64,000 bases of DNA, taken from NCBI RefSeq assembly GCF_001194135.2, contig NC_068982.1, positions 41,035,828 to 41,099,827 on the forward strand. The letters run 5' to 3'. Positions 2,016 through 58,865 of this stretch are shown one piece after another (position 1 is the first letter of the stretch; each line of letters begins with the position of its first letter). A program made the translations under genes and the position numbers. The DNA is from Octopus bimaculoides. Taxonomy: Eukaryota. The notes beneath the pieces were generated by a model, which did no database searches, had not been told where the DNA came from, and saw only the letters and a list, made by a program, of their open reading frames with translations.

Positions 2016-3140
2016 CTGAAACAGAAAGAAATATCATTAACAATGGATCATCATTTATTCAACCATGTTCAAATTATATTTGAAAACTCAATATATTAAA
2101 AAGCATAGATGTGATCTTGTACTAGGGAGGCTATTATGAACTGCATTAAAATGACTATCATGCACTTAAAGTTAGATTTGTGTCTAACCTAAAGTCAAAG
2201 ACAAACATCTAACATTTTAAACATTACAATTCTCCTTGTAAAAATCTTTACATACTTGATACAAAGATATATCGATTATTCAATGTACTTATCTTTTATA
2301 CAGCTTCTTAAAACTATTGTAAGCTTATTAAATGAAAAAAAAAAAAACATTGTTTTGGGTTCAATAATTAATTTATCAGCAATAGCTTGGTTGTGCAAAT
2401 TTGAAGATTTGCATAAGTTACAAAAGTATCTAATTCGGTTTCAAATTTTGGTACAAAGCCAGCAATTTCATGGAGGGGTTAAGCCAATTACATTGAATCC
2501 AGTGCTCAAATTGTACTTATTTTATAAACCCTAAAAGGATAAAAGGCAAAGTCGACCATGGCAGCATTTGAATTCAGAACAAATGTTGCTAAGCATTTTG
2601 TCTGGTAGCGATTCTGCCAGCTCACCATCTTACAGAAGTATCTAATTTAACACAAGAATGATTCTCCTAACACTAATCACTTAATAAAAGGAATATATAC
2701 TTCACTTACATACCATTTTCATGTCATAATTAAGTCAATATGAAATTGAGATTATTAAATAATGCAAGACTAATCTAGGGATATAGTTATTCTGATAGAT
2801 TTTGAAGCTAATCAATAAGTATAAATCAGGGGTCAGCAACAGATGAGCCACCATGGGTCTCAAGTCTTTTCTAAAATTTTCTCAAATCTAATATATTTGT
2901 GAACCATCGAAAGTTGATGGCTTTTAGTTAGACTTTTCTGTTACAATTTAATTTTTGTCTATTTAAGCATTACCAGTGAGAAATAGGGGATACAAAACGA
3001 TATTTTTATATGTGGGCCATGGACAAATGAAAAAATACCAAGACAGACAATTGCAAGAAGATATTGGCCCCTTGCATACATTCTAACGAAATTTGAAATG
3101 TGCACATAAATGTACATAATATATATATATATATATATAT

Positions 3141-3426
3141 ATTCAGGTGAATATGGTACTTAAGTTTAGGCACTAGAATTTAGTATGGTATTACCCATAC
3201 AATTTCAAAGTAAGGTGATTAAAATCAAAATAAGCAACAAGGATACCCAGAGGTAATGCAGTACGATCGTTTCATGCAACTCCATTTAATTGAACTATGT
3301 AATCAATGCAGAGCAATCTTCAGCTGCACAGAGACATAGAATGATTACATTGTTCAATTAAATGGAGTTGCATGAAACAATCGTACTGCATTACCTCTGG
3401 ATATCGTTGTTGCTTATTTTGATTTT
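3141..3426 (-). mobile_element. Probable Penelope-like terminal repeat with an inverted partial copy
   Basis: A ~200-bp unit carrying the hammerhead plus an 85-bp inverted duplicate (3221-3305 vs 3342-3426, 4 mismatches), flanked by (TA)n on both sides. Confidence 0.45.
3257..3328 (-). ncRNA. Type I hammerhead ribozyme-like motif
   Basis: Minus strand reads tgcag-CTGAAGA-ttgc...gcat-GAAAC-gatc-GTA-ctgca. Stem I is tgcag/ctgca, stem III is the palindrome ACGATCGT, and the cleavage triplet is GUA. The stem II closing pair is U.U (non-canonical). Confidence 0.65.
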
Positions 3427-4718
3427 ATATATATATAAACACACACATATGCACACTTTTCTGTGTACATAACTATTTTACATGCATGTACATGTTAGTA
3501 ACACAAGATTCAACAAACTATTGAAACAATGTTACTTTACAACCAGATACACTTACTGATAACTATTCATTTGAAACCTGTTAATGGAATATGATTTTTG
3601 ACCTAATGAAGCAAGCAGAGTTATGTACCTTCACATAGGCTATAAGTGACGGTTTTTTAAAAAAAAAACACTGATCAATAAAGCCACTGTGGCTCATTTA
3701 TTATTAATTACCAATCAAGTATTATATGACTTTCTGGTGAAAGATCTAATTTAGATGATAGATTGACAACAGTTTCATGTTTCTCACAGTATAAACCATA
3801 AAACAGAGTCATAAGGTGTATGTATTTGAAACAATGTTAAAAGTGACAGAGAAAGGCCACAACAGTTCATGTTAGAAATGAAATCAAAACTCTAAATATG
3901 GACTGTGTATTTTACTATTTCAACTATAAAAGGTTTTATGAATAAGGGTAGATGAAACGTTCTGACTCAAAAGAATGCAGATGATGGATGGTATTACTAA
4001 TATAAAATCTGCTGCACTTATTACTACACTGTACCTACTAGATAGTTCCTCAGGGAAAGTTCAAAAGGAGCAGTTTCTATATCTACTCCATCTCTACGGA
4101 TTATCAAAGCAGACTGCAGCAATAATGCTACTGTCAAAGTGCATCAGCTTTTATGAAGTACTGCAGTTGGAGGGGTTCAGCTTGGCAAGTAGTGTTGTTA
4201 CCAAGTTGTTAACTGGATATACATTATCCTATAGTACTTTTTGAAAGTGCTTTGAGTTGGCAGTTCTATCTTGTTATTTATATAGGTGATCAAGTTCTGA
4301 ATGTATGCAGCCTTGACACTGGTTAGTCAGACTAATCAGCAATGTACACAGAGACGACAACAGATAGCTTTCCTGCAGACGTCAGTGTTAATGACTTTTT
4401 TGTGATTCTGAGTTGAAAATGCAACAGAGGAAATGAATCCATTGTTGGGATATTCCGTGTTGAACCTATATGATCATCAGCGTTGTTTGCCTCTCCACAA
4501 GAATATGAGAGTGTCTATCATATATATTTTCTCTTCTTACTTGTTTCAGTCATGAGACTGCAGCCATGCTGGGGCACCGCCTTGAAGAATTTTAGTTGAA
4601 TGAATCAACACCAGTACTTATTCTACCCAACACTTTTGCCAAACCACTATGTTATGGGGATGTAAACACACAACATCAGTTGCCAAACAGTGGGGAGGGG
4701 ACAAACACAGATGCAAAG

Positions 4719-4922: not shown

Positions 4923-5719
4923 CACACAGAGGAAATCATAAAAGTAGCTAGCTGAGGCTCTGCATCCTGATTGGTCCATAAATATGATGGAACATATTTC
5001 ATTTCTATTAAAATCATAACTATTTAGAAGGATCAAAATTTTCAGATATATTTGTATTTATACATGCATATGTGCATGCACATGTGGACGTGCAAAGATA
5101 CCCAACTTTTACTAAATGAAACTAATTATAATTAATATAATGTATGATTTATTACTTTTTATGTAATACTCCACATATATTTCATATAGCCAAATAGTGA
5201 AGGTGTATGGCTCAGCGGTTAGAGCATCAGGTTCACAATCATGAGGTAGTGAGTTTGATTCCCAGACTTGGCAATGTATTGTGTTCTTGAACAAGACACT
5301 ATCTCACGCTGCTGCAGTTCACTCAGCTGTAGAAATAAGTTGCAACATCACTGATGCCAACCTGTATTGGCCTTTGCCTTTCCCTTGGATAATACCAGTA
5401 GCACAGAGAGGGGAGACTGATATGCATGGGCGACTGCTGGTCTTCTGTAAACAACTTTGCCCAGACTTGTACCTCAGAGGGAACTTTCTAGGTCAAAGCA
5501 TAATAGAAGTAAACAAGTGTCACTATCATGTAAGTGGTATCCCTTGTTTCCAATGTCCTGCGAAAAACACGTCTGGTCATGGTGTACTATTTACCTTATA
5601 TGGAAACAGGTGAGGGTAGGTGATGGAAAGGACATTCAACCATAGAAACTCTGCCTCAATAAATTCTGAAGGGGATCTTTACCCTTTTAATATAGAAAAA
5701 AAAAAAAAAATTTTCTTAC

Positions 5720-5796
5720 GAGTGCGGCACCATAAGAATAGTTTCAAGTTTTTGCTCATCAAATTTCCGAATAAAGATATTTGCAGAAGCTGCAAT
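5720..5796 (-). CDS. RPP14: RPP14-like internal coding exon (77 nt, phase 0 to 2)
   Basis: Acceptor ttatttcaaacag| and donor |gtaaga. Encodes IAASANIFIRKFDEQKLETILMVPH(S), versus recalled human VDAALPLDILTYEEKTLSAILRICSS. Phase is compatible with both neighbouring exons. Confidence 0.88.
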
Positions 5797-13693: not shown

Positions 13694-16600
13694 TTATAAC
13701 ACCACATTGTAATATTCCTTGTGGAGCATATGCAAATAGGTTTGTTTTGCTTCCCACTCTAGAGCAGCCAACATACAGTTGTCCATGTGAGAAGCAGGGC
13801 TCTTCCAAGAGAAGACCAGCTACAGAGAGGGCTTGACCCTAATATTTGTTAATGGACATGGCGAAAGTGACACAAAGGAGGAATTGTAGTCTTCTGAATG
13901 TAAAAGTAATGTCTGCTCCTGATGGAGTAAGAGGAATTCTTGGAATAATGACGTTATCACCTTTTCCACATCCAGAAAGAATGGTAGCCTCGATAACATG
14001 TGACATCATCTTCTTTATCACGAGTCGTGTTCCATTGCAAAGTCTTGGTGGTTCCAGATTGCGGAGTAGCATAACAGGCGTTCCAACTTTAAGTGATATG
14101 TGGGGAGGTAGTCCAGGAGGCTCCAACGAATTGAGAAATTCAGGAGGATAGTTCACCACTTCATTTGTATCTGGAACTGTATCAACAGACTTGTAAGTTC
14201 GAAGATTGCCATGAAGAGAATGCATCAGCTACGTTTTTTTGAGCAAATATTGCTCTTTCACACAGCCAATTGTGATTTAGGTAGTTTTCTTTGAAGTTGG
14301 GAAAGACTTTGTGTTTGAGGTCATCTACAGAATTAACAACAGAGCAAAATGGCCATACTTCCATTTCTCCTGCAGCATCGAGAGGCACCTTGCCATCACC
14401 AATTGTCAAAATGTCCTGTGCAAACTTCTTGGACATTTGGTTGCCGTGTAGCTGAGCTCTCATGCTAGTGTTAAGACTGAGGATGGTAACATGATGCCAC
14501 AGGGTAGAGGACTTTCAGCATGCTTGGACCTCATCTGCTCTAGTGCCTTTCGGAATGACAGGAAGAGTTTGCCTGAAATCACCTGACAACAGAAGCGTAA
14601 CACCTCCCATTGGAGCATGACAGTCTTGGATGTCTTTCAGGGCTCTATCTAATGCTTCCAAAGCTCTCTTGTGAGCCATGGTGCATTCATCCCAGACAAT
14701 TAGATGACACCTTTGAAGCACATGCCCTGATCTGAGCTTTGGGTGATGTTGCATGAAAGCATGTCGGATGCTGCTAAATTGAGAAGGAGTTTGAAAGTAG
14801 AGTGTGCTGTCCTGCCACTGGGTAACAAAGTAGCTGCAATCCCAGAGGAAGCCACAGCTACTGCAATATCCTGATGCTGCCAAATTTGTGCAAGGAGAAG
14901 CTTTATGTTTTTCTTGTCCCTCCAGGAGCATCAAGGAAGAAGATTCGTCCATCACATTGGCGTACACTGTTAATAATAGTTGTGTAGGCCTGCAGCTGGT
15001 CCGGAAGTAATTTATGCTCGTTTTCAGCAATGTACTTTGAAAGTGCTTGAGTGTCGTAAGATGTTTCACGAATGACAGCAGTGGGAAGGCTATTTGACCC
15101 TGACCTGAATGTTTGTGGCAGGCCATAGGTGGACAATTCATTACCACCCAGTGTGGCAATTCTGTCTTCAATGTCAATGAGGGTTTTGTTGTAGACTTCA
15201 TTGCTGATATCCTCCATGTCAGGATAGAGCCATTGAGCTTGCCGCTGAAAGTCTTCAGTCAGGTTGTCCCTGTACTTGAGCCATAGAGTTGCAGGATCAC
15301 ACAGTTCGCATGTCTGTAGTAATACTGCAAATAGTGCCCTGATAAAGCAGCCTCTCCCAAAGTTGCATCCCATTGTGCACCATCTTCCAACAGTCCTTGT
15401 TGATAGCAGGCTTCTCTGTATGTTGTGCAGACATGTTCATGAATGGTTTTTAAGGCCTGGAAAGACGTGGGGCCTCTGACTTCATGCAGTAGTAGGCGGA
15501 GGTAGAAGCACTCTTGTTGAGTGGGATGTACTGTGTATACTCGGCCAAGGCAAGTGTCAAACTTAATGCCAGGGTATCCATGAACATTTTGACCTGCTTT
15601 CCTTGGAGTCCATTGTTTTCCATTCCAAGTGTAGTGCGATGGAATCTGTGGATACAGTAAGGTTTGAGCGAATGGATCCACTTGACAGAGCTTGAAGAAT
15701 GCAGTGAGTGTGCTATCCCTTGGTTGCTCTGCCAACAGAGAAGCATTAGCATTGGTGAAGTACGCTCTTTGACTGTTTTCCAGGTGCACTGCAAGCTGTT
15801 GAATGGCGGGGTGTCGTTGGTGAAGTGGTAAGCCAAAGATGCGCCAGAAAGCCTCGTTGCTACTTATGTAGCGCCCCACCTGATAGTGCGTCACCTCATC
15901 CTGGCAGTATTGTTGTTGAAGTGCAAACATTGCAGCGTCAGAATCCTTGTTCACATACTTGCAAACATATTTGATGGACTTAACGGAGTTGCAAAACTCA
16001 ACGTTAATGTGGGCATTGAAGATCTTTGACAGGAGTGGGCAGTAAGCAACAATCCATCTATTATCAACCTCATGCTGTCCAATAGTTGCTGTGAAACTGC
16101 CGTCTTGTGGTTTTCTCCGTCTGTATGATGAATACCCATCAGTACCTGTCTGAGTTTGTTGTAGGAACTTCCTTGGAAACTTTTTTGAACATACGCTGTC
16201 TTTCAAACATGGTGAGTTAATGTTGAATCCACGCCCACATGGACCATGCACCATGTTTGCTTTAACTAAGTGCGATGGATCAGGAAGTTCTGCAGATATT
16301 ATGTTGCCGATGTCAGTTGATTTGATCTTCGTTGAGAGCCAAAGCAGGATATGAGCATGTGGAAGGCCCCTTTTTTGCCATTCAATTGTGTACATGTCAC
16401 ATTGTATGGGTCCGAAGATTTGCCCTTTTTTTAGGAGGTCCATGAGAGTAATTAATTTCAGATGGATAACTCGGGCGAGGAGGTCATGCCTGTCTTTAGG
16501 CTTTTGACCTAAGAAGTGTTCGGCCTGAATCTCCTTCCACTTGGGATTGCATGTGAAAGTGATGAATAAGTCAGGCCTGCCGTAATGGTCGACAAAGGTC

Positions 16601-17150
16601 ATTGCATCCCGTGTTCTTTCATGCATATATCGGGGACTTCCAGTGAATGTGGAAGGCAAGATGCAAAGTCTTCCTATGCTTGTTGGAGCAGCATCATTGT
16701 TGATGGCATCTCGGAGATGGATGTAGTTGTCAGAGCGCAATCTCTCTGATTCCATTTTTGCGCACATATCAACTGCAAATTGATTAAACAGATCTCGAGA
16801 CTGGTGGAGGTGATTAGAGGAGTTGTCTCGTGTCATAAATCGGTATGAGTAGAAGTCCATGCAGGATACTGGCTTGTTGAGATATTCATTACGATTTTGT
16901 GGATGTTGCTGTGGTATACCGATGTGGTAGCCATCCTCACCATAAACAAACAGAAGTGGATACTGAAGTGTATCGTATGATCGGTGTGTTTCTGTAATTC
17001 GTTGGAGGGTGGTGTCACGTCGCCTAAGGACAATGTCTCTGGGATTGTGCTGTTCACCGTGAAGGAGTACAGCTATTTCATTGCATGTGGGTGCATTGTA
17101 ACGGCTTGCATGTTCTGTAGATGGTCTTTTCTGAGCATCTATGATAACAG
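13694..17150 (-). mobile_element. Decayed autonomous Helitron, Rep (HUH) + PIF1-like helicase, 5'-truncated and frameshifted
   Basis: Rep motifs FITFTCNPKW, IEWQKRGLPHAHILLWL and KYVCKYVNK. Helicase motifs LDAPGGT(R)[44 protein letters not shown] and CFSHGQLYVGCSRV. The terminal YNVVL* ends at 13694. Split over several ORFs. Confidence 0.95.
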
Positions 17151-18074
17151 TAAGAAGTGAAAGAAGTGCAAGTGTTATTGCTCCGTATGAAGTACCCTGT
17201 TAGCCTATTGTTAGTGAAAGAAATGGAAAAGAATAGAAAATGTAAGAAATGAAGTGAATAAATGTAAAAGATTGCTCGGCGCCTGCATTAGGGAAGAAGT
17301 ATGGAATTATTTGGAAAGTAGGAGTCGTGACAGGGAATAGAAAAAGAAGGTATTATTGTAGCATAATTTGAATGTCCGTGATGAAAGACATATGAATGGG
17401 CTGGAAAAGAAAGAAAGAGAATAGTTGGGAGTTGATATGCAGGTGTAGTTTGAGACATTAACAGAATTGTTTTGTATTTGTAAGACGTCATGCCTACAGG
17501 CATTGACAATCAAAGACCTCTGTGCCAAAATCTGAAGATTCCTGTGTTCTTTCTAGGCAAGATAACTGTGCATTCCCATTGTCTTCTATCGGTCTATAGC
17601 AAAAGACACTTGCCCAAGGTGCCATGTAGTGGGACTGAACCCAAAACCACATGGTTGGGAATAAAACTTATTGTCACACAGCCACTCTGCCTATTTGTCT
17701 CCTGAGCTTACCCTTGGGACACATGATTTATTTAATCCTTAAGTAGGGCATGTCTAAGGACCAGCTCAGCTCCAAGTCCTGCATGCCTTAACCACAGAAC
17801 CATCTTCTGCTATCTAACCCATTACTGAAGTCCTTGACTATCACCCTGGGTCAGAACAGATTTAAGAATAATGGTGAGTAAGGTGTAACTGTATACTCCC
17901 TAAGACTCTCTGAACTCTCCAGATGAAGTTTCACAACTTGATTCAATTTAATGTGTTGCTCAGGTCACAGCATATGCTTGATATTTTTTCTTTATCAAGT
18001 AATTTTGGTAAAGCACTATATGGTATTATTCTAAAGAAATTTGGTGTATAAGGCTGGAAAACACAAAGCAGAAC

Positions 18075-18890: not shown

Positions 18891-19886
18891 AACTTCACCT
18901 ATTTCCATGCTGTTGTTCAACCTCACTGAATTCACCGAAGACTTCTAGGAAGTTTTATACATAGTCCCTAATCTTTACAGTGCAATTCTCAGCACTATCA
19001 TTCATCGACATATAATTCATTTAATGAAATTTTCTACAAAACGGAATTTGTGAAAATTTTTTTTGAGAGGGATTTTGGAGGATTCAAATGTGCAGTTAGG
19101 TAAAGTAAACCACACAGATGCTTTACCCCAACACAAAAGCTGCAGGAACTACTGAGAAATTTTGCAATCTCTTCTAAATTCATTGCAATACCGGACACCC
19201 ATGTTGTCAGCATGTATCTCAGGTTCACAAGCCCTCCACCTCTTAGCCTGTATGCATCGTCTGAGTGGGGCAGCGATGACTGCTAATTTCTAGTTAATTT
19301 CCACAAAAATGAAAATATTGGCACCGATAGTTGCAAAGGGAGGTAAGCACGTCACTCAAATTCGTAGAATTTTTTTTTTTAATTCTAACAAAGTGTGACA
19401 GTTTACATCTAAAGGTACTCCCCCAAAACACCCCTTTTTTTTTATTTAATTTTTTTTTCTACACAANNNNNNNNNNNNNNNNNNNNNNNNNNNNNNNNNN
19501 NNNNNNNNNNNNNNNNNNNNNNNNNNNNNNNNNNNNNNNNNNNNNNNNNNNNNNNNNNNNNNNNNNNNNNNNNNNNNNNNNNNNNNNNNNNNNNNNNNNN
19601 NNNNNNNNNNNNNNNNNNNNNNNNNNNNNNNNNNNNNNNNNNNNNNNNNNNNNNNNNNNNNNNNNNNNNNNNNNNNNNNNNNNNNNNNNNNNNNNTATGC
19701 AGAAAAATACGGAGATTGTGATTCTGAAAAAAAATTCCAAAACTTTTTCTACTTAGGGTTTCAGGGTTACGGAAAAAAAATGAAAAATGAAGAAATTGGA
19801 GGGGAGGGAGTACGGGGGAGGGGAGATAAAAAAAAATTCAAAATTCCGATTTTTTGCAATTTTCCGGTATCTCTGTATCCAAAAAC

Positions 19887-21135: not shown

Positions 21136-21667
21136 TTGTTATAAATAATTTAACATATCCCGTAAAAAAAAAAAAAACTATGGAGAGACCTGAAGATTGT
21201 ATTGGGATCTTACCAGTCTTCCGTTTTCTTTAATACACTGTAAACATAGAAACTGGTGTGAAAACAAACACAAAAAGGTTGGAGATTGCATAACTTGACG
21301 GCGATCACCTAAAAGGTTAATGCCTCCGGATATTGTAAAAGATGCCTATAGTGAACTGTTTAATTATCTTTGTGATAAAAGTAGGGATTTTGAAAATTCT
21401 TTCGATAGATTCATTGGTGTCCAGCTTGTGTCTCGCCGTTTCAAATTTCTCCCAGCCTCAGTTACCACAACACCAAAACATTCCGTTTATTATTTCTCTG
21501 TGCTCTCTCATAACAATTGCTCTCCTCCTGTCTCTGTCGGTTCCATTTGTTTTTTGTCCAGCCCTCTTCTTTCTCTTCGCTTTCATCTCCACTTGTTCTT
21601 TAAAAAGCCTCATTACAACGAAAAATCATTTCTTCTCATACCCTTGTCATCTGAATGGTTTTCAACC

Positions 21668-23442
21668 ATGGGAAAGTGTATCGAACCTGAAACTAGAAGA
21701 AAATCGCCCAAAACAACTCATGATGGTGCCAGAATGAAACCGGTCATGAGTGAAGAATTGGATTTTACCGCCCATACACTGTCTTCTGATCGACTGGGCA
21801 AAATTATTGATGAGATAGATGACAAGTGTAATGAAATGAGAGATGAACAAGCAATTCCTGTCGTTAAACTATTCCCCACCAACCTCTATGGTGATATCAA
21901 CCCGATAAAATCTCACATCGAGAACACAACTATAACCACCACCATCACCACAACCACAACAACAACAAGCAGCTCTAACAGCTGCAATACCTCCCCTTTT
22001 GTTACTTCTGCATCCCCCCACTGTTTTACCTCCCTTAAGGAGAGTAATACTTCTACACTTCATTCTAACCAAGAAGAAATAGTAGCATCAAATAACGACA
22101 AATCTTGTGCAGATGTGATCCACACACGAACTCTTATCATTGGCTGTGGTGCTTCAAATAGTAGTAATCAGTGTGGTGATACTATTAGTGCAGCAACTGG
22201 CCGCTCAGTTATTGGTAGCAGTAACTCTAACAGTCACCCTGCTGTTTCTTGTAGCTCTAACAGACAACAAACCGGAGACCCTGTCTCAACAACAATTGAT
22301 AACAACAAGCAATCTTCTGGCGGCATTAGTACAATTAATGTCGAAGATTCTTCGGAAGATACACAACAAAATCGCGAAAATGGTCGCAAGAAAGCAGAAG
22401 GTGCTGCAGTCTCGTATACACTACCACTCGAACGGCTTTCAGTCGTTGATTTAAATTCTGATGAGGATGAGAAATGTTCTGTTCAACAATCTAATGAAGA
22501 TTCGATTAGATTCGGAAATTCCATTCCTAACAATTGTCATCGGGAATCTAAACAGTCAACACAGTATTCCGTTGAGAAGATAAACGATTCTTCCTTGACG
22601 TCGGCTTCTGGTGCTAGCGGTCATCCGAAAGGCAAAAACCAAGATACCAAGTCACATTTATCGAATAACAGGAGTCTTGAATTGCCTTTGACGAATGGAT
22701 TAACTCGAATTGTGGAGAGTAACTTGGCTTCTTGTTGTGATCTTGGCCATAACTTTCTTTGCCAGAATACTACCAGTGGTACAACAACCCCATCCATGTC
22801 TCCGATTGACGATGTCACTGTTATGGTAGGTAAAAACGGAAAGTTATCTACTGTACTTGAAAACATTCCTCTTTTGTACATCCCCACCACCAAACAGTTG
22901 GTGTCTCAGGACTGGAATTCAGTGACCCCTGGTAGTATTGAACATGGCAAACAGAAAGAAATAGAATATGTTCCTATGACTTGTAAATTTAAAAACGAAG
23001 ACAAATCTTCAAATTGTGAAAAAGATTATGTAGAAGTTGATCAGAGTCCTCGGAGCACAAGCTGTTCGTTGAACTGTGTGGATACATCTAGTCTATCTAG
23101 TCTAAGTACCTGTACAGATGTTGCTTGCGGTGTTTCGGTGGCATCAGGGGTCAGTGATGAATTCAGTGACAATTCCGCATCAACGGGAACCCCAGTTAAT
23201 ACTGAAGCAACTACTAGTTGTGCAATTTCTAATGTTTCTTCTACTGGGACCAACTCGCAGAACTCTACATTCGATACTACCAACCCGTTGGAATCGTGTC
23301 TTGTAGAGGTCAACTTACACTCTAGGAATTCTTACGAACCAACACGAAACCAATGGCCACCGTCAACACCTCAGGACCAAAATTTATTCATTCGAGATTG
23401 TACAAAACGGAAAAGTATCGGACTGACAGGATTTCTTGGCAG
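21668..23442 (+). CDS. TBC1D14: First coding exon (591 codons + 2 nt) of a TBC1D12/TBC1D14-family Rab-GAP-domain protein; long S/T/N-rich N-terminus
   Basis: Lies in the 708-aa ORF, starts at accATGG (21668) and ends at a strong donor cag|gtaaga (23443). Four motifs occur in the order I recall for human TBC1D14: LLYIPTTKQL (LYSPTSKAL), DTSSLSSLSTCTD (DDVSVCSVSSLGTE), LVEVNLHS (FTNVTLSS) and KSIGLTGFLGR| (KILGPFSNFFAR|). The TBC domain is not in the window; TBC1D12 and TBC1D14 are probably co-orthologs. Confidence 0.7.
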
Positions 23443-23489
23443 GTAAGATTTAATACATACATGTGTGTGCGTGTGTATGTATGTATATA

Positions 23490-25300: not shown

Positions 25301-26799
25301 TTATGTAAAAAAAAAAAAAAAAAAGAAATGACAAGACCAGGATCCTGCTTTTTGGGTGCTTGTTGATATCAGACCCTTGTTCTATTTACGTTGATCACTA
25401 GACCTACGTTCTTAGCGAAAATTTTGGTAATTATACTTCTTCTGTTGAAGTGGCACTACCTGCAGCATCAGTTGCACACTGAAGTTTCAAATGCCAGTAT
25501 AGCTATAGGTCTTTGTTCCGGTACGGAGTCTGCCAGGGTTCAATAACCTTTACCATATCTCAGCGGTTTGAAATCTGGGTTTTTGGTGGGTGTTTGCTCA
25601 TTGTCTTAAAAAAAAAAAAAANNNNNNNNNNNNNNNNNNNNNNNNNNNNNNNNNNNNNNNNNNNNNNNNNNNNNNNNNNNNNNNNNNNNNNNNNNNNNNN
25701 NNNNNNNNNNNNNNNNNNNNNNNNNNNNNNNNNNNNNNNNNNNNNNNNNNNNNNNNNNNNNNNNNNNNNNNNNNNNNNNNNNNNNNNNNNNNNNNNNNNN
25801 NNNNNNNNNNNNNNNNNNNNNNNNNNNNNNNNNNNNNNNNNNNNNNNNNNNNNNNNNNNNNNNNNNNNNNNNNNNNNNNNNNNNNNNNNNNNNNNNNNNN
25901 NNNNNNNNNNNNNNNNNNNNNNNNNNNNNNNNNNNNNNNNNNNNNNNNNNNNNNNNNNNNNNNNNNNNNNNNNNNNNNNNNNNNNNNNNNNNNNNNNNNN
26001 NNNNNNNNNNNNNNNNNNNNNNNNNNNNNNNNNNNNNNNNNNNNNNNNNNNNNNNNNNNNNNNNNNNNNNNNNNNNNNNNNNNNNNNNNNNNTTTTTTTT
26101 TTTTTTTTTTTTTTGTGTTAATCGTCTCGGGATAAAATATTTTTAGTGGCTGTTAACAAACATATATTTAGGCTAAATTGTAGAGATAATTTAGTTGGAA
26201 TATTCGGTCTGGATAAGTCGTCACCTCTTGGGAAACTTGAAAGGAGATTTGTCACTAAAGACATTTACACAGCGATTAGAACTACTAGAATTCTTCCTTT
26301 TGGTAAAAATCATGTTTTTATTTTATTTCTATTTTTTACTCCTTCGTCAGCTAATGTCACAAATTCTTTATAGCTACGCTTTTTCTGAAATAGTCATTGA
26401 GTCATTGTACTTTGATGCTAGGGAATCATTAAGTTCTCTCTCACCCACACACACAGAGGAAATTTCTTAAATCTATAATCAGGAGACCAGAAATTCAAAC
26501 TGGGGTCTCTATACGAATTAAAAATAACCCGGAGTCTCTCTGCTAAAATACAAAATCTGTTTATATATATATATATATATATATATATTTAGGAGATTAA
26601 TTTTTGAAAGTTGCATTCCCTCGCTTTCGGTAAATATGTTGCTTATTTTTTGGTAGTTTTTGACTTTTTTAGTCCCTCTAAGCGTGAGGNNNNNNNNNNA
26701 TATATATATATATATATATACACATGTTTGGAGCTGGTAGCTAGGAATCTCCCATTAAAATTAATAATTGTCTTCGCTTTCTTCAATTGAAATTTTATT

Positions 26800-53381: not shown

Positions 53382-54266
53382 ATCATCATCATCATCATCA
53401 TCGTTTAACGTCCGCTTTCCATGCTAGCATGGGTTGGACGATTTGACTGAGGACTGGTGAAACCGGATGGCAACACCAGGCTCCAGTCTGATTTGGCAGA
53501 GTTTCTACAGCTGGATGCCCTTCCTAACGCCAACCACTCAGAGAGTGTAGTGGGTGCTTTTACGTGTCACCCGCACGAAAACGGCCACGCTCAAAATGGT
53601 GTCTTTTATGTGCCACCCGCACAAGCCANNNNNNNNNNNNNNNNNNNNNNNNNNNNNNNNNNNNNNNNNNNNNNNNNNNNNNNNNNNNNNNNNNNNNNNN
53701 NNNNNNNNNNNNNNNNNNNNNNNNNNNNNNNNNNNNNNNNNNNNNNNNNNNNNNNNNNNNNNNNNNNNNNNNNNNNNNNNNNNNNNNNNNNNNNNNNNNN
53801 NNNNNNNNNNNNNNNNNNNNNNNNNNNNNNNNNNNNNNNNNNNNNNNNNNNNNNNNNNNNNNNNNNNNNNNNNNNNNNNNNNNNNNNCTTGCCTCACCAC
53901 CTCAGCCCAGGTCTTCCTGGGCCTACCTCTTCCACAGGTTCCCTCAACTGTTAGGGTGTGGCACTTTTTCACGCAGCTATCCTCCTCCATTCTCACCACA
54001 TGTCCATACCAGCGCAATCGTCTCTCTTGCACGCCACAACTGATGCTTCTAATGTTCAGCTTTTCTCTCAAGATACTTACACTCTGACGGGTATTCACAT
54101 TGACATTACACATCCAACGGAGCATACTGGCTTCATTCCTTGCGAGCTTACGTATGTCCTCAGCAGTTACAGCCCATGTTTCACTGCCATGTAGCATGGT
54201 TGTTCGTACGCATGCGTCATACAGTCTGCCTTTTACTCTGAGTGAGAGTCCCTTTGTCTTCAGCAA
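53382..54266 (-). mobile_element. 5'-truncated RTE-clade LINE (RT C-terminus + 3' UTR + (GAT)n tail), with an internal gap
   Basis: KGRLYDACVRTTMLHGSETW...RRLRWYGHVVRM...GRGRPRKTW is typical of RTE; the tail (ATC)n starts at 53382. Confidence 0.9.
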
Positions 54267-58358: not shown

Positions 58359-58865
58359 NNNNNNNNNNNNNNNNNNNNNNNNNNNNNNNNNNNNNNNNNN
58401 NNNNNNNNNNNNNNNNNNNNNNNNNNNNNNNNNNNNNNNNNNNNNNNNNNNNNNNNNNNNNNNNNNNNNNNNNNNNNNNNNNNNNNNNNNNNNNNNNNNN
58501 NNNNNNNNNNNNNNNNNNNNNNNNNNNNNNNNNNNNNNNNNNNNNNNNNNNNNNNNNNNNNNNNNNNNNNNNNNNNNNNNNNNNNNNNNNNNNNNNNNNN
58601 NNNNNNNNNNNNNNNNNNNNNNNNNNNNNNNNNNNNNNNNNNNNNNNNNNNNNNNNNNNNNNNNNNNNNNNNNNNNNNNNNNNNNNNNNNNNNNNNNNNN
58701 ACAATTTTACATTAAACTGAATGATTACTCAACACTTTTTGCAGAGTTCATATTTATTGTATTTTTACAAGAAGTTTAGTGACAGTGACTTCGAAGTTTC
58801 AATTTGCTAGCCTTTATCGGACAGTTTAACGAAAGCTAGTAGGCTGACCACTCTCCTTGTAAATG

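What the first reader, a model, noticed from the sequence alone, without database searches (positions are those of the whole stretch)
3257..3328. Hammerhead ribozyme-like motif, sense to an RNase P subunit (RPP14) intron
Seen: the minus strand carries all type I hammerhead parts in order: stem I 5' arm tgcag, core CUGAAGA, stem II (tgc/gca), GAAAC, the palindromic stem III ACGAUCGU, a GUA cleavage triplet and stem I 3' arm ctgca. Predicted cut is between plus positions 3262 and 3261. Established: minimal type I hammerheads with a palindromic stem III occur in Penelope-like retroelements and metazoan retrozymes and can act as dimers. Inference: this is an octopod Penelope/retrozyme-type ribozyme repeat, transcribed as part of RPP14 pre-mRNA ~1.25 kb upstream of the 2016 acceptor. 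Caveat: the 10.1-11.1 position is U.U.
Basis: partly seen in the sequence, partly recalled or inferred. Interest (0 to 1): 0.85.

Follow-up and report, generated by a model that had tools for sequence, protein, structure and literature searches.

The report
Hammerhead-like motif locked in a palindrome
The hammerhead-ribozyme-like string is really there, but it sits inside a young, Octopus bimaculoides-specific 285-bp mobile-element insertion whose 86-bp hairpin prevents the ribozyme fold. It is best read as an ordinary intronic repeat, carrying either a dead relic of a hammerhead or a chance look-alike.

Summary
A descriptor relaxed just enough to admit it expects about 3e-4 matches per 64-kb window, or about 10 per octopus genome. 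The gene context is also right: a sense-strand intron of the RPP14-family gene LOC106884227, 1.25 kb upstream of the acceptor.

The motif lies in a 208-bp near-perfect palindrome (arms 3220-3305 and 3342-3427). With a 77-nt tail, this forms a 285-bp insertion in a (TA)n microsatellite. The insertion is absent from the orthologous intron of O. vulgaris and O. sinensis.

The upstream arm pairs with the helix II 3' strand, GAAA, helix III, the cleavage site and the helix I 3' strand. Forcing the hammerhead fold costs about +70 kcal/mol. No Rfam hammerhead model scores the region even at E<=10. Helix II is 3 bp between two U.U mismatches, with a 43-nt unstructured insert, and G10.1-C11.1 is missing. 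I found no second copy, tandem array or nearby PLE ORF in about 270 kb of octopod DNA.

The insertion architecture resembles Penelope-like element (PLE) insertions, so a decayed PLE-type hammerhead remains possible. A working ribozyme in this pre-mRNA is very unlikely.

The parts
3143..3427 (-). Whole O. bimaculoides-specific insertion (285 bp) in a (TG)n(TA)n microsatellite
   Evidence: Flanks align at 92-95% to O. sinensis (L004) and O. vulgaris (L003), but this stretch is absent there. nhmmer and blastn find no other copy in the DNA held.
3342..3427 (-). Upstream arm, transcribed first in the gene sense: an inverted partial copy of 3220-3305
   Evidence: the repeat finder I1: 86 nt, 95% complementary. 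The four mismatches include CGATCG versus CAATCG.
3306..3341 (-). 36-nt loop of the palindrome. It carries UGCAG-CUGAAGA and a competing local CUGCA (3311-3307).
   Evidence: The local hairpin UGCAG/CUGCA appears in the MFE folds.
3220..3305 (-). Downstream arm. It carries the helix II 3' strand, GAAA, helix III, the cleavage site and the helix I 3' strand.
3143..3219 (-). 77-nt unique tail between the palindrome and the (TA)n tract
   Evidence: Absent from L003 and L004. It has no inverted counterpart.
3257..3328 (-). Hammerhead-like motif, type I topology, with predicted cleavage between 3262 and 3261
   Evidence: Sequence; the only descriptor match
3317..3323 (-). CUGAAGA box (positions 3-9)
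3274..3316 (-). Helix II region: a 43-nt insert with 3 WC pairs between two U.U mismatches
   Evidence: MFE -6.4 kcal/mol, z = -0.7 against shuffles
3262..3273 (-). GAAA plus helix III (C-GAUC-G) plus U16.1 and A17
   Evidence: The palindrome ACGAUCGU gives a -10 kcal/mol self-duplex.
3119..3142 (.). (TA)12 microsatellite flank
3428..3450 (.). (TA)n(CA)n microsatellite flank
5719..5796 (-). Upstream exon of LOC106884227 (IAASANIFIRKFDEQKLETILMVPHS), donor TC|GTAAGA
   Evidence: tblastn with P0001/P0005
1937..2015 (-). Downstream exon (HLLHLWTSIITTSNLCDKACTLHVLQ), acceptor AG at 2017-2016

Best explanation
The site is a young, lineage-specific mobile-element insertion. It is not a working ribozyme.

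A 285-bp element landed in a (TG)n(TA)n microsatellite of a 3.7-kb intron of the O. bimaculoides RPP14-family gene, after the split from the O. vulgaris/O. sinensis lineage. In gene sense it consists of an 86-nt inverted partial copy (3427->3342) followed by a 199-nt unit (3341->3143). Together the first 208 nt form a near-perfect palindrome.

In the pre-mRNA the upstream arm is made first. It zips up with the downstream arm as that arm emerges, giving an 86-bp duplex (shown by folding). That duplex contains the helix II 3' strand, GAAA, helix III, the scissile bond and the helix I 3' strand of the hammerhead-like motif. The catalytic fold cannot form, and there is no second copy in cis to build the dimeric helix III.

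The RNA therefore behaves as a long intronic dsRNA hairpin that is removed with the intron. It is a plausible ADAR or Dicer substrate, but that is inference and was not tested.

The hammerhead resemblance has two possible sources. One is a decayed remnant of a PLE-type minimal hammerhead carried by the source element. The other is coincidence inside a palindromic MITE-like element. These two origins are about equally likely on present evidence.
For: - Palindrome: 86-nt arms, 95% complementary, 36-nt loop.
- The transcript folds to -142 kcal/mol, z = -21.
- Cost of forcing the hammerhead fold: +70.7 kcal/mol in the full insert, +8.7 in the 199-nt unit alone, and a 3e-4 ensemble fraction in the isolated 76-mer.
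- The isolated motif is no more stable than shuffles, z = +0.68, and its MFE is not the hammerhead.
- Rfam: no family at gathering score in the window. No hammerhead family at E<=10 in 3050-3550; the only strong sub-threshold matches there are to MIR2863 and mir-5014, which I read as generic long-hairpin matches.
- Presence/absence: O. sinensis and O. vulgaris flanks align at 92-95%, but 3143-3427 is missing. An unrelated SINE-like insert sits in the same microsatellite there.
- Single copy in the window plus 142 kb of loci.
- Intron and strand assignment.
Against: - The full core and a palindromic helix III are improbable by chance in one window (about 3e-4; 0 of 7 simulated matches were palindromic).
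- Two isolated 76-mers cofold into exactly the double-hammerhead as their MFE, -36.0 versus 2 x -14.7 kcal/mol.
- The insertion architecture matches published PLE insertion features ((TA)n target, adjacent inverted 5'-truncated copy, one-sided tail; PMC8557442), and PLEs normally carry hammerheads.
- Secondary-structure energies ignore tertiary contacts, helicases and RNA-binding proteins.
- ADAR or Dicer processing of the hairpin was not tested.
Confidence: 0.75

Rival explanations
1. Relic of a genuine PLE/retrozyme-type minimal hammerhead. The 199-nt unit would be the 5'-truncated 3' end of a Penelope-like element (or its non-autonomous derivative) whose RNA self-cleaves as a dimer. This copy would be a dead-on-arrival insertion with the typical inverted 5'-truncated partner.
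For: - All 11 invariant core positions, A15.1-U16.1 and H17 are present.
- Helix III is 2 bp with a palindromic tetraloop, a hallmark of metazoan type I and PLE hammerheads (PMC4209133).
- The dimer MFE is the double-hammerhead.
- The (TA)n target, the inverted 5'-truncated copy at the 5' end and the one-sided tail fit PLE insertions (PMC8557442).
- A U.U pair at the base of helix II occurs in active axolotl HHR_Amex2 (PMC7229834).
- Cephalopod genomes hold Rfam Hammerhead_1 hits (235 in giant squid, PMC6962438), and PLEs are still active in O. vulgaris (PMC13282606).
- Chance expectation is only about 3e-4 per window.
Against: - No Rfam hammerhead match even at E<=10.
- G10.1-C11.1, described as highly conserved in PLE hammerheads, is missing.
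- Helix II should be 4-8 bp with a short loop. Here it is 3 bp plus a 43-nt insert with z = -0.7.
- No family copy, tandem repeat, RT or GIY-YIG ORF was found near it or anywhere in about 270 kb of octopod DNA.
- The tail is 77 nt, against the published 30-40 nt.
Confidence: 0.35
2. Coincidental motif in a palindromic DNA-transposon derivative: a Tc1/mariner-type MITE or foldback element with a TA target. The 208-bp palindrome TA|AAATC...GATTT|TA would have inserted at a TA next to a pre-existing 77-nt segment, and the hammerhead boxes are chance.
For: - Near-perfect 86-bp terminal inverted repeats, small size and no ORF.
- TA at both ends, within a (TA)n tract.
- The best Rfam matches are to MIR2863 and mir-5014, which I read as generic long-hairpin matches.
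- About 10 chance descriptor matches are expected per genome.
- A weak internal direct repeat (TGCAGCTGAA--GATTGCTCTGCATT / TGCA--TGAAACGATCGTACTGCATT) could supply helix I and part of both boxes at once.
- TIR elements expanded in Octopus about 25 My ago (PMC13282606).
Against: - It needs a second event to explain the 77-nt tail, which is also absent from O. vulgaris and O. sinensis.
- The termini do not resemble those I recall for Tc1/mariner elements. This rests on memory, not on a test.
- The TA 'duplication' cannot be told apart from the palindrome or the microsatellite.
- The internal repeat is not significant (p = 0.09).
- The palindromic helix III is an extra roughly 14-fold improbability under chance.
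- No second copy was found.
Confidence: 0.35
3. Active self-cleaving hammerhead in the RPP14 pre-mRNA. This is the functional implication of the reader's title.
For: The motif is on the sense strand of the intron, and the core is intact.
Against: - The upstream arm sequesters 52 of the 72 nt, and the hammerhead-constrained ensemble is 70.7 kcal/mol less favourable.
- There is no dimer partner in cis.
- Single PLE-type motifs were inactive in vitro, and dimers only weakly active (PMC4209133).
- The insertion is absent in sister species, so it is not a conserved feature of the gene.
Confidence: 0.03
4. The hairpin is a selected small-RNA precursor (miRNA or hairpin-RNA gene).
For: Perfect long hairpin. 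Sub-threshold matches to MIR2863 and mir-5014 (62.6 and 48.6 bits).
Against: - The scores are far below the gathering thresholds (94 and 101).
- From memory, MIR2863 is a plant family. From general knowledge, an 86-bp near-perfect stem is atypical for animal miRNA precursors.
- The hairpin is lineage-specific and shows no conservation.
Confidence: 0.05

Closest known systems
Minimal type I hammerheads of Penelope-like elements and metazoan non-LTR retrozymes (Cervera & de la Pena 2014, PMC4209133; 2020, PMC7229834)
   Same: - Type I topology and an intact CUGANGA/GAAA/UH core.
- Short helix I (5-6 bp).
- A 2-bp helix III with a palindromic tetraloop that can extend to 8 bp in a dimer.
- Host insertion in (TA)n with an adjacent inverted 5'-truncated copy and a one-sided tail, as described for PLE insertions (PMC8557442).
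   Different: - No G10.1-C11.1 pair.
- No compact 4-8 bp helix II. Here it is 3 bp plus a 43-nt insert.
- No tandem arrangement, no pLTR/RT-EN context and no family with covariation could be demonstrated.
- Not detected by any Rfam hammerhead model.
Naiad 'HHR_half_core' cases (Craig et al. 2021, PMC8557442)
   Same: CUGANGA and GAAA boxes are separated by 35-50 nt and do not fit stem/loop descriptors, in (TA)n-targeting PLEs that also occur in Octopus.
   Different: The authors do not regard those cases as canonical hammerheads. Cephalopod Naiads are reported as anciently inactivated, whereas this insertion is younger than the O. bimaculoides / O. vulgaris split. No sequence comparison was possible.
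Palindromic MITEs / foldback elements that form long intronic hairpins
   Same: 208-bp near-perfect inverted repeat, non-coding, TA-flanked, intronic, giving a -142 kcal/mol RNA hairpin and generic hits to the MIR2863 and mir-5014 hairpin models.
   Different: There is an asymmetric 77-nt tail. No recognisable superfamily termini, no unambiguous target-site duplication and no second copy were found.
Twin-priming-type inverted insertions of retroelements
   Same: The 5' part is inverted relative to the 3' part, and the 5' end is truncated, all in one insertion event.
   Different: The inverted segment duplicates part of the direct segment rather than continuing upstream of it. There is no poly(A), and the element family is unknown.

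Membership tests
Hammerhead ribozyme, type I | Conserved core C3 U4 G5 A6 N7 G8 A9 ... G12 A13 A14 A15.1-U16.1 H17, in type I order | tested here: met
   Sequence reading; descriptor match
Hammerhead ribozyme, type I | Helix I and helix III flanking the core | tested here: met
   UGCAG/CUGCA gives 5 WC pairs plus a G.U. Helix III is A-U and C-G with the loop GAUC.
Hammerhead ribozyme, type I | A stable helix II starting with G10.1-C11.1 | tested here: not met
   Position 10.1-11.1 is U.U. Only 3 WC pairs follow, then another U.U. The 43-nt insert has an MFE of -6.4 kcal/mol, z = -0.7. A U.U precedent exists in axolotl HHR_Amex2, but with an otherwise compact helix II.
Hammerhead ribozyme, type I | Match to the curated covariance models (Rfam hammerhead families) | tested here: not met
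   No hit at gathering score in the window. No hammerhead family at E<=10 in 3050-3550 with lax filters.
Hammerhead ribozyme, type I | The catalytic fold is accessible in the native transcript | tested here: not met
   Cost of the hammerhead-constrained fold: +70.7 kcal/mol (285-nt insert) and +8.7 kcal/mol (199-nt unit). Ensemble fraction 3e-4 in the isolated 76-mer. Only the artificial dimer of isolated 76-mers prefers the double-hammerhead.
Hammerhead ribozyme, type I | Site-specific self-cleavage | not testable with these tools
   Needs in vitro transcription or end-specific RNA-seq.
PLE min-HHR / metazoan retrozyme hammerhead | Palindromic 15.2-16.2 and loop 3, allowing a dimeric helix III | tested here: met
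   ACGAUCGU is self-complementary, with a duplex energy of -10 kcal/mol. The other arm reads ACAAUCGU, a CpG-type change.
PLE min-HHR / metazoan retrozyme hammerhead | Membership of a multi-copy consensus family with covariation in helices I and II | tested here: inconclusive
   No other copy in the window, L001-L004 (142 kb), JGI metagenomes, GTDB genomes or the protein collection via translated peptides. The octopus genome itself could not be searched.
PLE min-HHR / metazoan retrozyme hammerhead | Location in a pLTR next to an RT/GIY-YIG ORF, or in 170-400-nt tandem repeats | tested here: not met
   No tandem copy. The window ORFs that were examined are a Helitron (Pfam), a LINE-like RT tail (by eye only) and host exons. 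Solo 5'-truncated fragments are common for PLEs, however.
PLE min-HHR / metazoan retrozyme hammerhead | [quoted passage not shown] | tested here: inconclusive
   U3316 could be read as that nucleotide, but then position 10.1-11.1 is still U.U.
PLE-type insertion architecture | Microsatellite (TA)n target, 5' truncation, adjacent inverted 5'-truncated copy, one-sided tail | tested here: met
   Empty-site comparison with L003 and L004, repeat anatomy and the published description. The tail is 77 nt against the published 30-40 nt. This is resemblance only.
MITE (TA-targeting, Tc1/mariner-like) | Terminal inverted repeats, small size, non-coding | tested here: met
MITE (TA-targeting, Tc1/mariner-like) | Unambiguous TA target-site duplication and a multi-copy family with identical termini | tested here: inconclusive
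   TA is present at both ends, but it is itself palindromic and part of (TA)n. No second copy was found.
MIR2863 / mir-5014 miRNA precursors | Score at or above the Rfam gathering threshold | tested here: not met
   62.6 versus 94 bits and 48.6 versus 101 bits. Both strands score alike, so this looks like a generic long-hairpin match.

The most novel reading that the evidence does not exclude
The 199-nt unit is the 3' end of an undescribed, recently active octopod PLE or retrozyme lineage. Its hammerhead would have an expanded, loosely paired helix II (43 nt, U.U at 10.1-11.1) and would cleave only as a dimer. That would extend the known structural range of PLE hammerheads and link the Naiad 'half-core' cases to real catalysis.
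Probability: 0.12. Interest if true: 0.45.

Novelty: new member of a known kind. Interest (0 to 1): 0.2.

Why it matters
If the motif were an active ribozyme inside an RNase P subunit pre-mRNA, it would be a curiosity with possible regulatory meaning. The evidence says it is not active there.

What remains is an ordinary case. A young repeat insertion in a microsatellite hot spot creates an 86-bp intronic dsRNA in a cephalopod, a group known for heavy A-to-I editing. The case also shows that string-level hammerhead matches need a check of local competing structure and of family copies. Only if genome-wide copies showed conserved cores with covarying helices would it add a modest new variant to PLE and retrozyme hammerheads.

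Tried and rejected
1. Rfam scans at gathering score (window; L001-L004) and in E-value mode on 3050-3550, on L003 31400-33000 and on L005/L006. No hammerhead anywhere.
2. Search for family copies. All of the following returned nothing:
   - blastn and nhmmer against the window and all loci;
   - an exact 21-mer from the arm against JGI metagenome contigs and GTDB genomes;
   - a chimeric query of the element's six-frame peptides against the 5.8-billion protein collection, hoping for ORFs called on other copies.
3. The PLE route. An ORF in L003/L004 looked to me (from memory) like the N-terminal region of a PLE RT. I used it to fetch relatives, and only two short contigs came back (L005, L006). 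They have no hammerhead and no similarity to the element, and Pfam gives no family for the ORF.
4. Helitron hypothesis, prompted by a Helitron in the same gene. The insertion ends lack the 5'-TC / 3'-CTRR termini and a subterminal 3' hairpin in either orientation. Rejected from the sequence.
5. An internal direct repeat as the source of both boxes. The alignment is not significant, p = 0.09.
6. Supplementary TE libraries of the PLE and O. vulgaris repeat papers. None is held as text.
7. A min-HHR-style descriptor (helix II >=4 bp, short loop, optional bulge) on about 270 kb of octopod DNA. No hits, so I have no local example of a bona fide octopus PLE hammerhead to compare with.
8. Assembly artefact. 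Rejected because the arms differ at 4 positions and the window is 100% identical to the deposited chromosome record over the stretch compared (window 2900-3800 against L002).

Full report
**Observation**

- UGCAG, 3328-3324
- CUGAAGA, 3323-3317
- a short UGC/GCA pairing, 3315-3313 with 3277-3275
- GAAA, 3273-3270
- C-GAUC-G closed by A3270-U3263
- A17 at 3262
- CUGCA, 3261-3257

A second U.U follows the three pairs of helix II.

I wrote a descriptor just loose enough to admit this candidate:
- helix I of 5 WC pairs
- CUGANGA
- at least 3 WC pairs at the base of helix II, with or without the first pair
- a helix II insert of up to 60 nt
- GAAA
- a closed helix III insert of 4-12 nt
- U, then H

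It finds only this site in the window and in 142 kb of orthologous octopod DNA. In 1.5 Gb of first-order Markov sequence with the window's composition it found 7 matches. That is about 3e-4 per 64-kb window and about 10 per 2.3-Gb genome. None of the 7 had a palindromic helix III. The string is therefore unusual for one window, but it is the kind of thing a genome-wide scan will meet a few times by chance.

**What surrounds it**

The motif is not free-standing. The repeat finder reports an inverted repeat with arms 3220-3305 and 3342-3427: 86 nt, 95% complementary, 36 nt between the arms.
- The loop carries UGCAG-CUGAAGA.
- The downstream arm (in the gene sense) carries everything from the middle of the 'helix II' insert through GAAA, helix III, the scissile bond and the 3' strand of helix I.
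- The loop also holds a nearer CUGCA (3311-3307) that competes for the UGCAG.

Folding results:
- The 251-nt transcript folds into a single hairpin of -142.3 kcal/mol, z = -21.
- The isolated motif folds at -14.7 kcal/mol, z = +0.68, into a non-hammerhead structure.
- Forcing the hammerhead pairs with an unpaired core costs +70.7 kcal/mol in the complete insert and +8.7 kcal/mol in the 199-nt unit without the upstream arm. In the isolated 76-mer the hammerhead-like ensemble is 3e-4 of the total.
- The 43-nt helix II insert has an MFE of -6.4 kcal/mol, no better than shuffles, z = -0.7.
- The one result in favour: two isolated 76-mers cofold into exactly the double-hammerhead with an 8-bp helix III as their MFE, -36.0 against 2 x -14.7 kcal/mol.

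Rfam gives no match at gathering score in the window. In E-value mode on 3050-3550 no hammerhead family appears even at E<=10. The best hits are MIR2863 (62.6 bits, gathering 94, both strands alike) and mir-5014. I read these as generic long-hairpin matches.

**Gene and species context**

Exon peptides retrieved Octopus bimaculoides LOC106884227, which carries PF01900 (RNase P Rpp14 family), together with its O. vulgaris, O. sinensis and Argonauta hians orthologues.

Over the 901-bp stretch compared (window 2900-3800), the window is 100% identical to O. bimaculoides chromosome CM046602.1 (L002).

The exons on the minus strand map to 20576-20532, 12221-12150, 8087-~8004, ~5796-5719 and 2015-1937. 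The donor is TC|GTAAGA and the acceptor AG is at 2017-2016.

**Presence/absence**

In O. sinensis (L004) and O. vulgaris (L003) the sequences on both sides align at 92-95%, but window 3143-3427 has no counterpart. At the same (TG)n(TA)n microsatellite those species carry an unrelated SINE-like insert of about 300 bp that ends in (GAT)n.

The O. bimaculoides insert is therefore 285 bp: the 208-bp palindrome plus a 77-nt tail (3219-3143), bounded by (TA)n on both sides. It is younger than the species split, which is put at 13-33 My in PMC13282606. The four arm differences (4.7%) are consistent with that age. One of them turns CGATCG into CAATCG in the upstream arm, a CpG-type change, so the palindromic helix III was probably ancestral. 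The feature is not a conserved part of the RPP14 gene.

**What kind of element**

No second copy exists in the window, in the four loci, in JGI metagenomes or GTDB genomes, or as translated ORFs in the protein collection. The octopus genome itself could not be searched with these tools, so the family question stays open. Two readings fit.

(a) A retroelement tail of PLE type. Craig et al. [quoted passage not shown] The insert has all four traits, although its tail is 77 nt. PLEs carry hammerheads in their pLTRs. Cervera & de la Pena (PMC4209133) list the hallmarks as:
- families with covariation;
- an extra nucleotide before 10.1;
- a highly conserved G10.1-C11.1;
- palindromic 15.2-16.2 and loop 3.

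Only the last is met here. G10.1-C11.1 is not met. The first could not be tested. The same paper reports that single min-HHRs are inactive and dimers only weakly active in vitro.

(b) A palindromic TA-flanked MITE or foldback element next to a separate 77-nt piece, with a coincidental motif. This needs two events and has no recognisable superfamily termini. It is otherwise unremarkable, and about 10 such motifs per genome are expected by chance.

Helitron termini are absent in both orientations. A weak internal direct repeat that could generate helix I and parts of both boxes is not significant, p = 0.09.

**Mechanism**

Shown by computation:
- In the pre-mRNA the upstream arm is transcribed before the motif and is perfectly placed to capture it.
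- The hammerhead fold is excluded.
- No second copy exists in cis for a dimeric helix III.

Inferred:
- The RNA is a long intronic dsRNA hairpin that leaves with the intron.
- It is a plausible ADAR or Dicer substrate.
- The insertion is probably neutral.

Undecided: whether the source element's RNA, without the inverted arm and in tandem or in trans, ever cleaved.

**Comparison and novelty**

The site works like, and most probably is, an ordinary young repeat insertion. As a hammerhead it passes the core, helix I and helix III tests. It fails the helix II / G10.1-C11.1 test, the covariance-model test and the accessibility test. It cannot be filed as a member of the PLE or retrozyme hammerhead families without family copies.

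The closest literature parallel for the long box spacing is the Naiad 'HHR_half_core' class (35-50 nt, PMC8557442), which its authors do not treat as canonical hammerheads. The U.U at the base of helix II has an active precedent in axolotl HHR_Amex2, 22% cleavage per hour as a monomer (PMC7229834), so that caveat alone is not fatal.

**Verdict**

| Question | Result |
|---|---|
| Observation | confirmed |
| Interpretation | partly supported (context right, PLE link possible but unproven, functional ribozyme very unlikely) |
| Interest | low |

The decisive step is a whole-genome search for copies of the 199-nt unit, followed by a cleavage assay of the unit with and without the upstream arm.

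Noticed in passing
L003 24809-25127 and L004 19158-19482 (orthologous to the window 3143-3427 site): O. vulgaris and O. sinensis carry a different, SINE-like insert of about 300 bp, ending in (GAT)n, in the very same (TG)n(TA)n microsatellite. This microsatellite has been hit independently in two lineages.
   Followed up: partly
window 13842-17199, minus strand: Frameshifted Helitron coding region in three pieces: Helitron_like_N (E 1.6e-46), PIF1 helicase (E 1.1e-21) and Pif1_2B (E 2.6e-15). It lies inside the RPP14-family gene, between the exons at 12.2 kb and 20.5 kb.
   Followed up: partly
L003 32185-32867 and L004 26520-27201: An ORF just downstream of the last RPP14 exon in O. vulgaris and O. 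sinensis has motifs (SDKTGNLYKL; LKDCKQNF...RLICP) that I recall from the N-terminal region of Penelope-like RTs. Pfam gives no family. The only relatives found are P0007 and P0008, on short contigs. tblastn found no counterpart in the window or in L002 (O. bimaculoides).
   Followed up: partly
window 53538-54266 minus; L003 22754-23383 and 36696-38114 minus: Non-LTR (LINE-like) reverse-transcriptase fragments. The L003 36696-38114 ORF has RVT_1 plus a PHD-like finger. The window fragment, which resembles it by eye only, is interrupted by an assembly gap.
   Followed up: partly
L001 7905-8020 minus and 14203-14266 plus (Argonauta hians): A 5S rRNA match above gathering score (45.8 bits) lies between the RabGAP-TBC gene and the RPP14 gene. 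A tRNA-like match (33.6 bits) lies just downstream of the RPP14 gene (gene at L001 10001-13300). Either could be a small-RNA-derived SINE or a real gene.
   Followed up: no
window 3115-3195 plus: Sub-threshold 'Purine riboswitch' hit (25.7 bits, E 0.1) driven by the (TA)n tract. I read this as a low-complexity artefact.
   Followed up: no
window 21299-23443 plus: A 715-codon open frame that is an exon of the neighbouring, divergently oriented RabGAP-TBC gene (1150-aa product in L002-L004). It is conserved in all four species.
   Followed up: no
window 19467-19695, 25622-26092, 53629-53887, 58359-58700 and six shorter runs: Assembly gaps (N runs, 1407 N in total). None is near the finding.
   Followed up: yes
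window 3330-3255 minus (two copies in silico): Two isolated copies of the motif cofold into the textbook double-hammerhead as the minimum-energy structure. This is the single computational result that favours a real hammerhead ancestry.
   Followed up: partly
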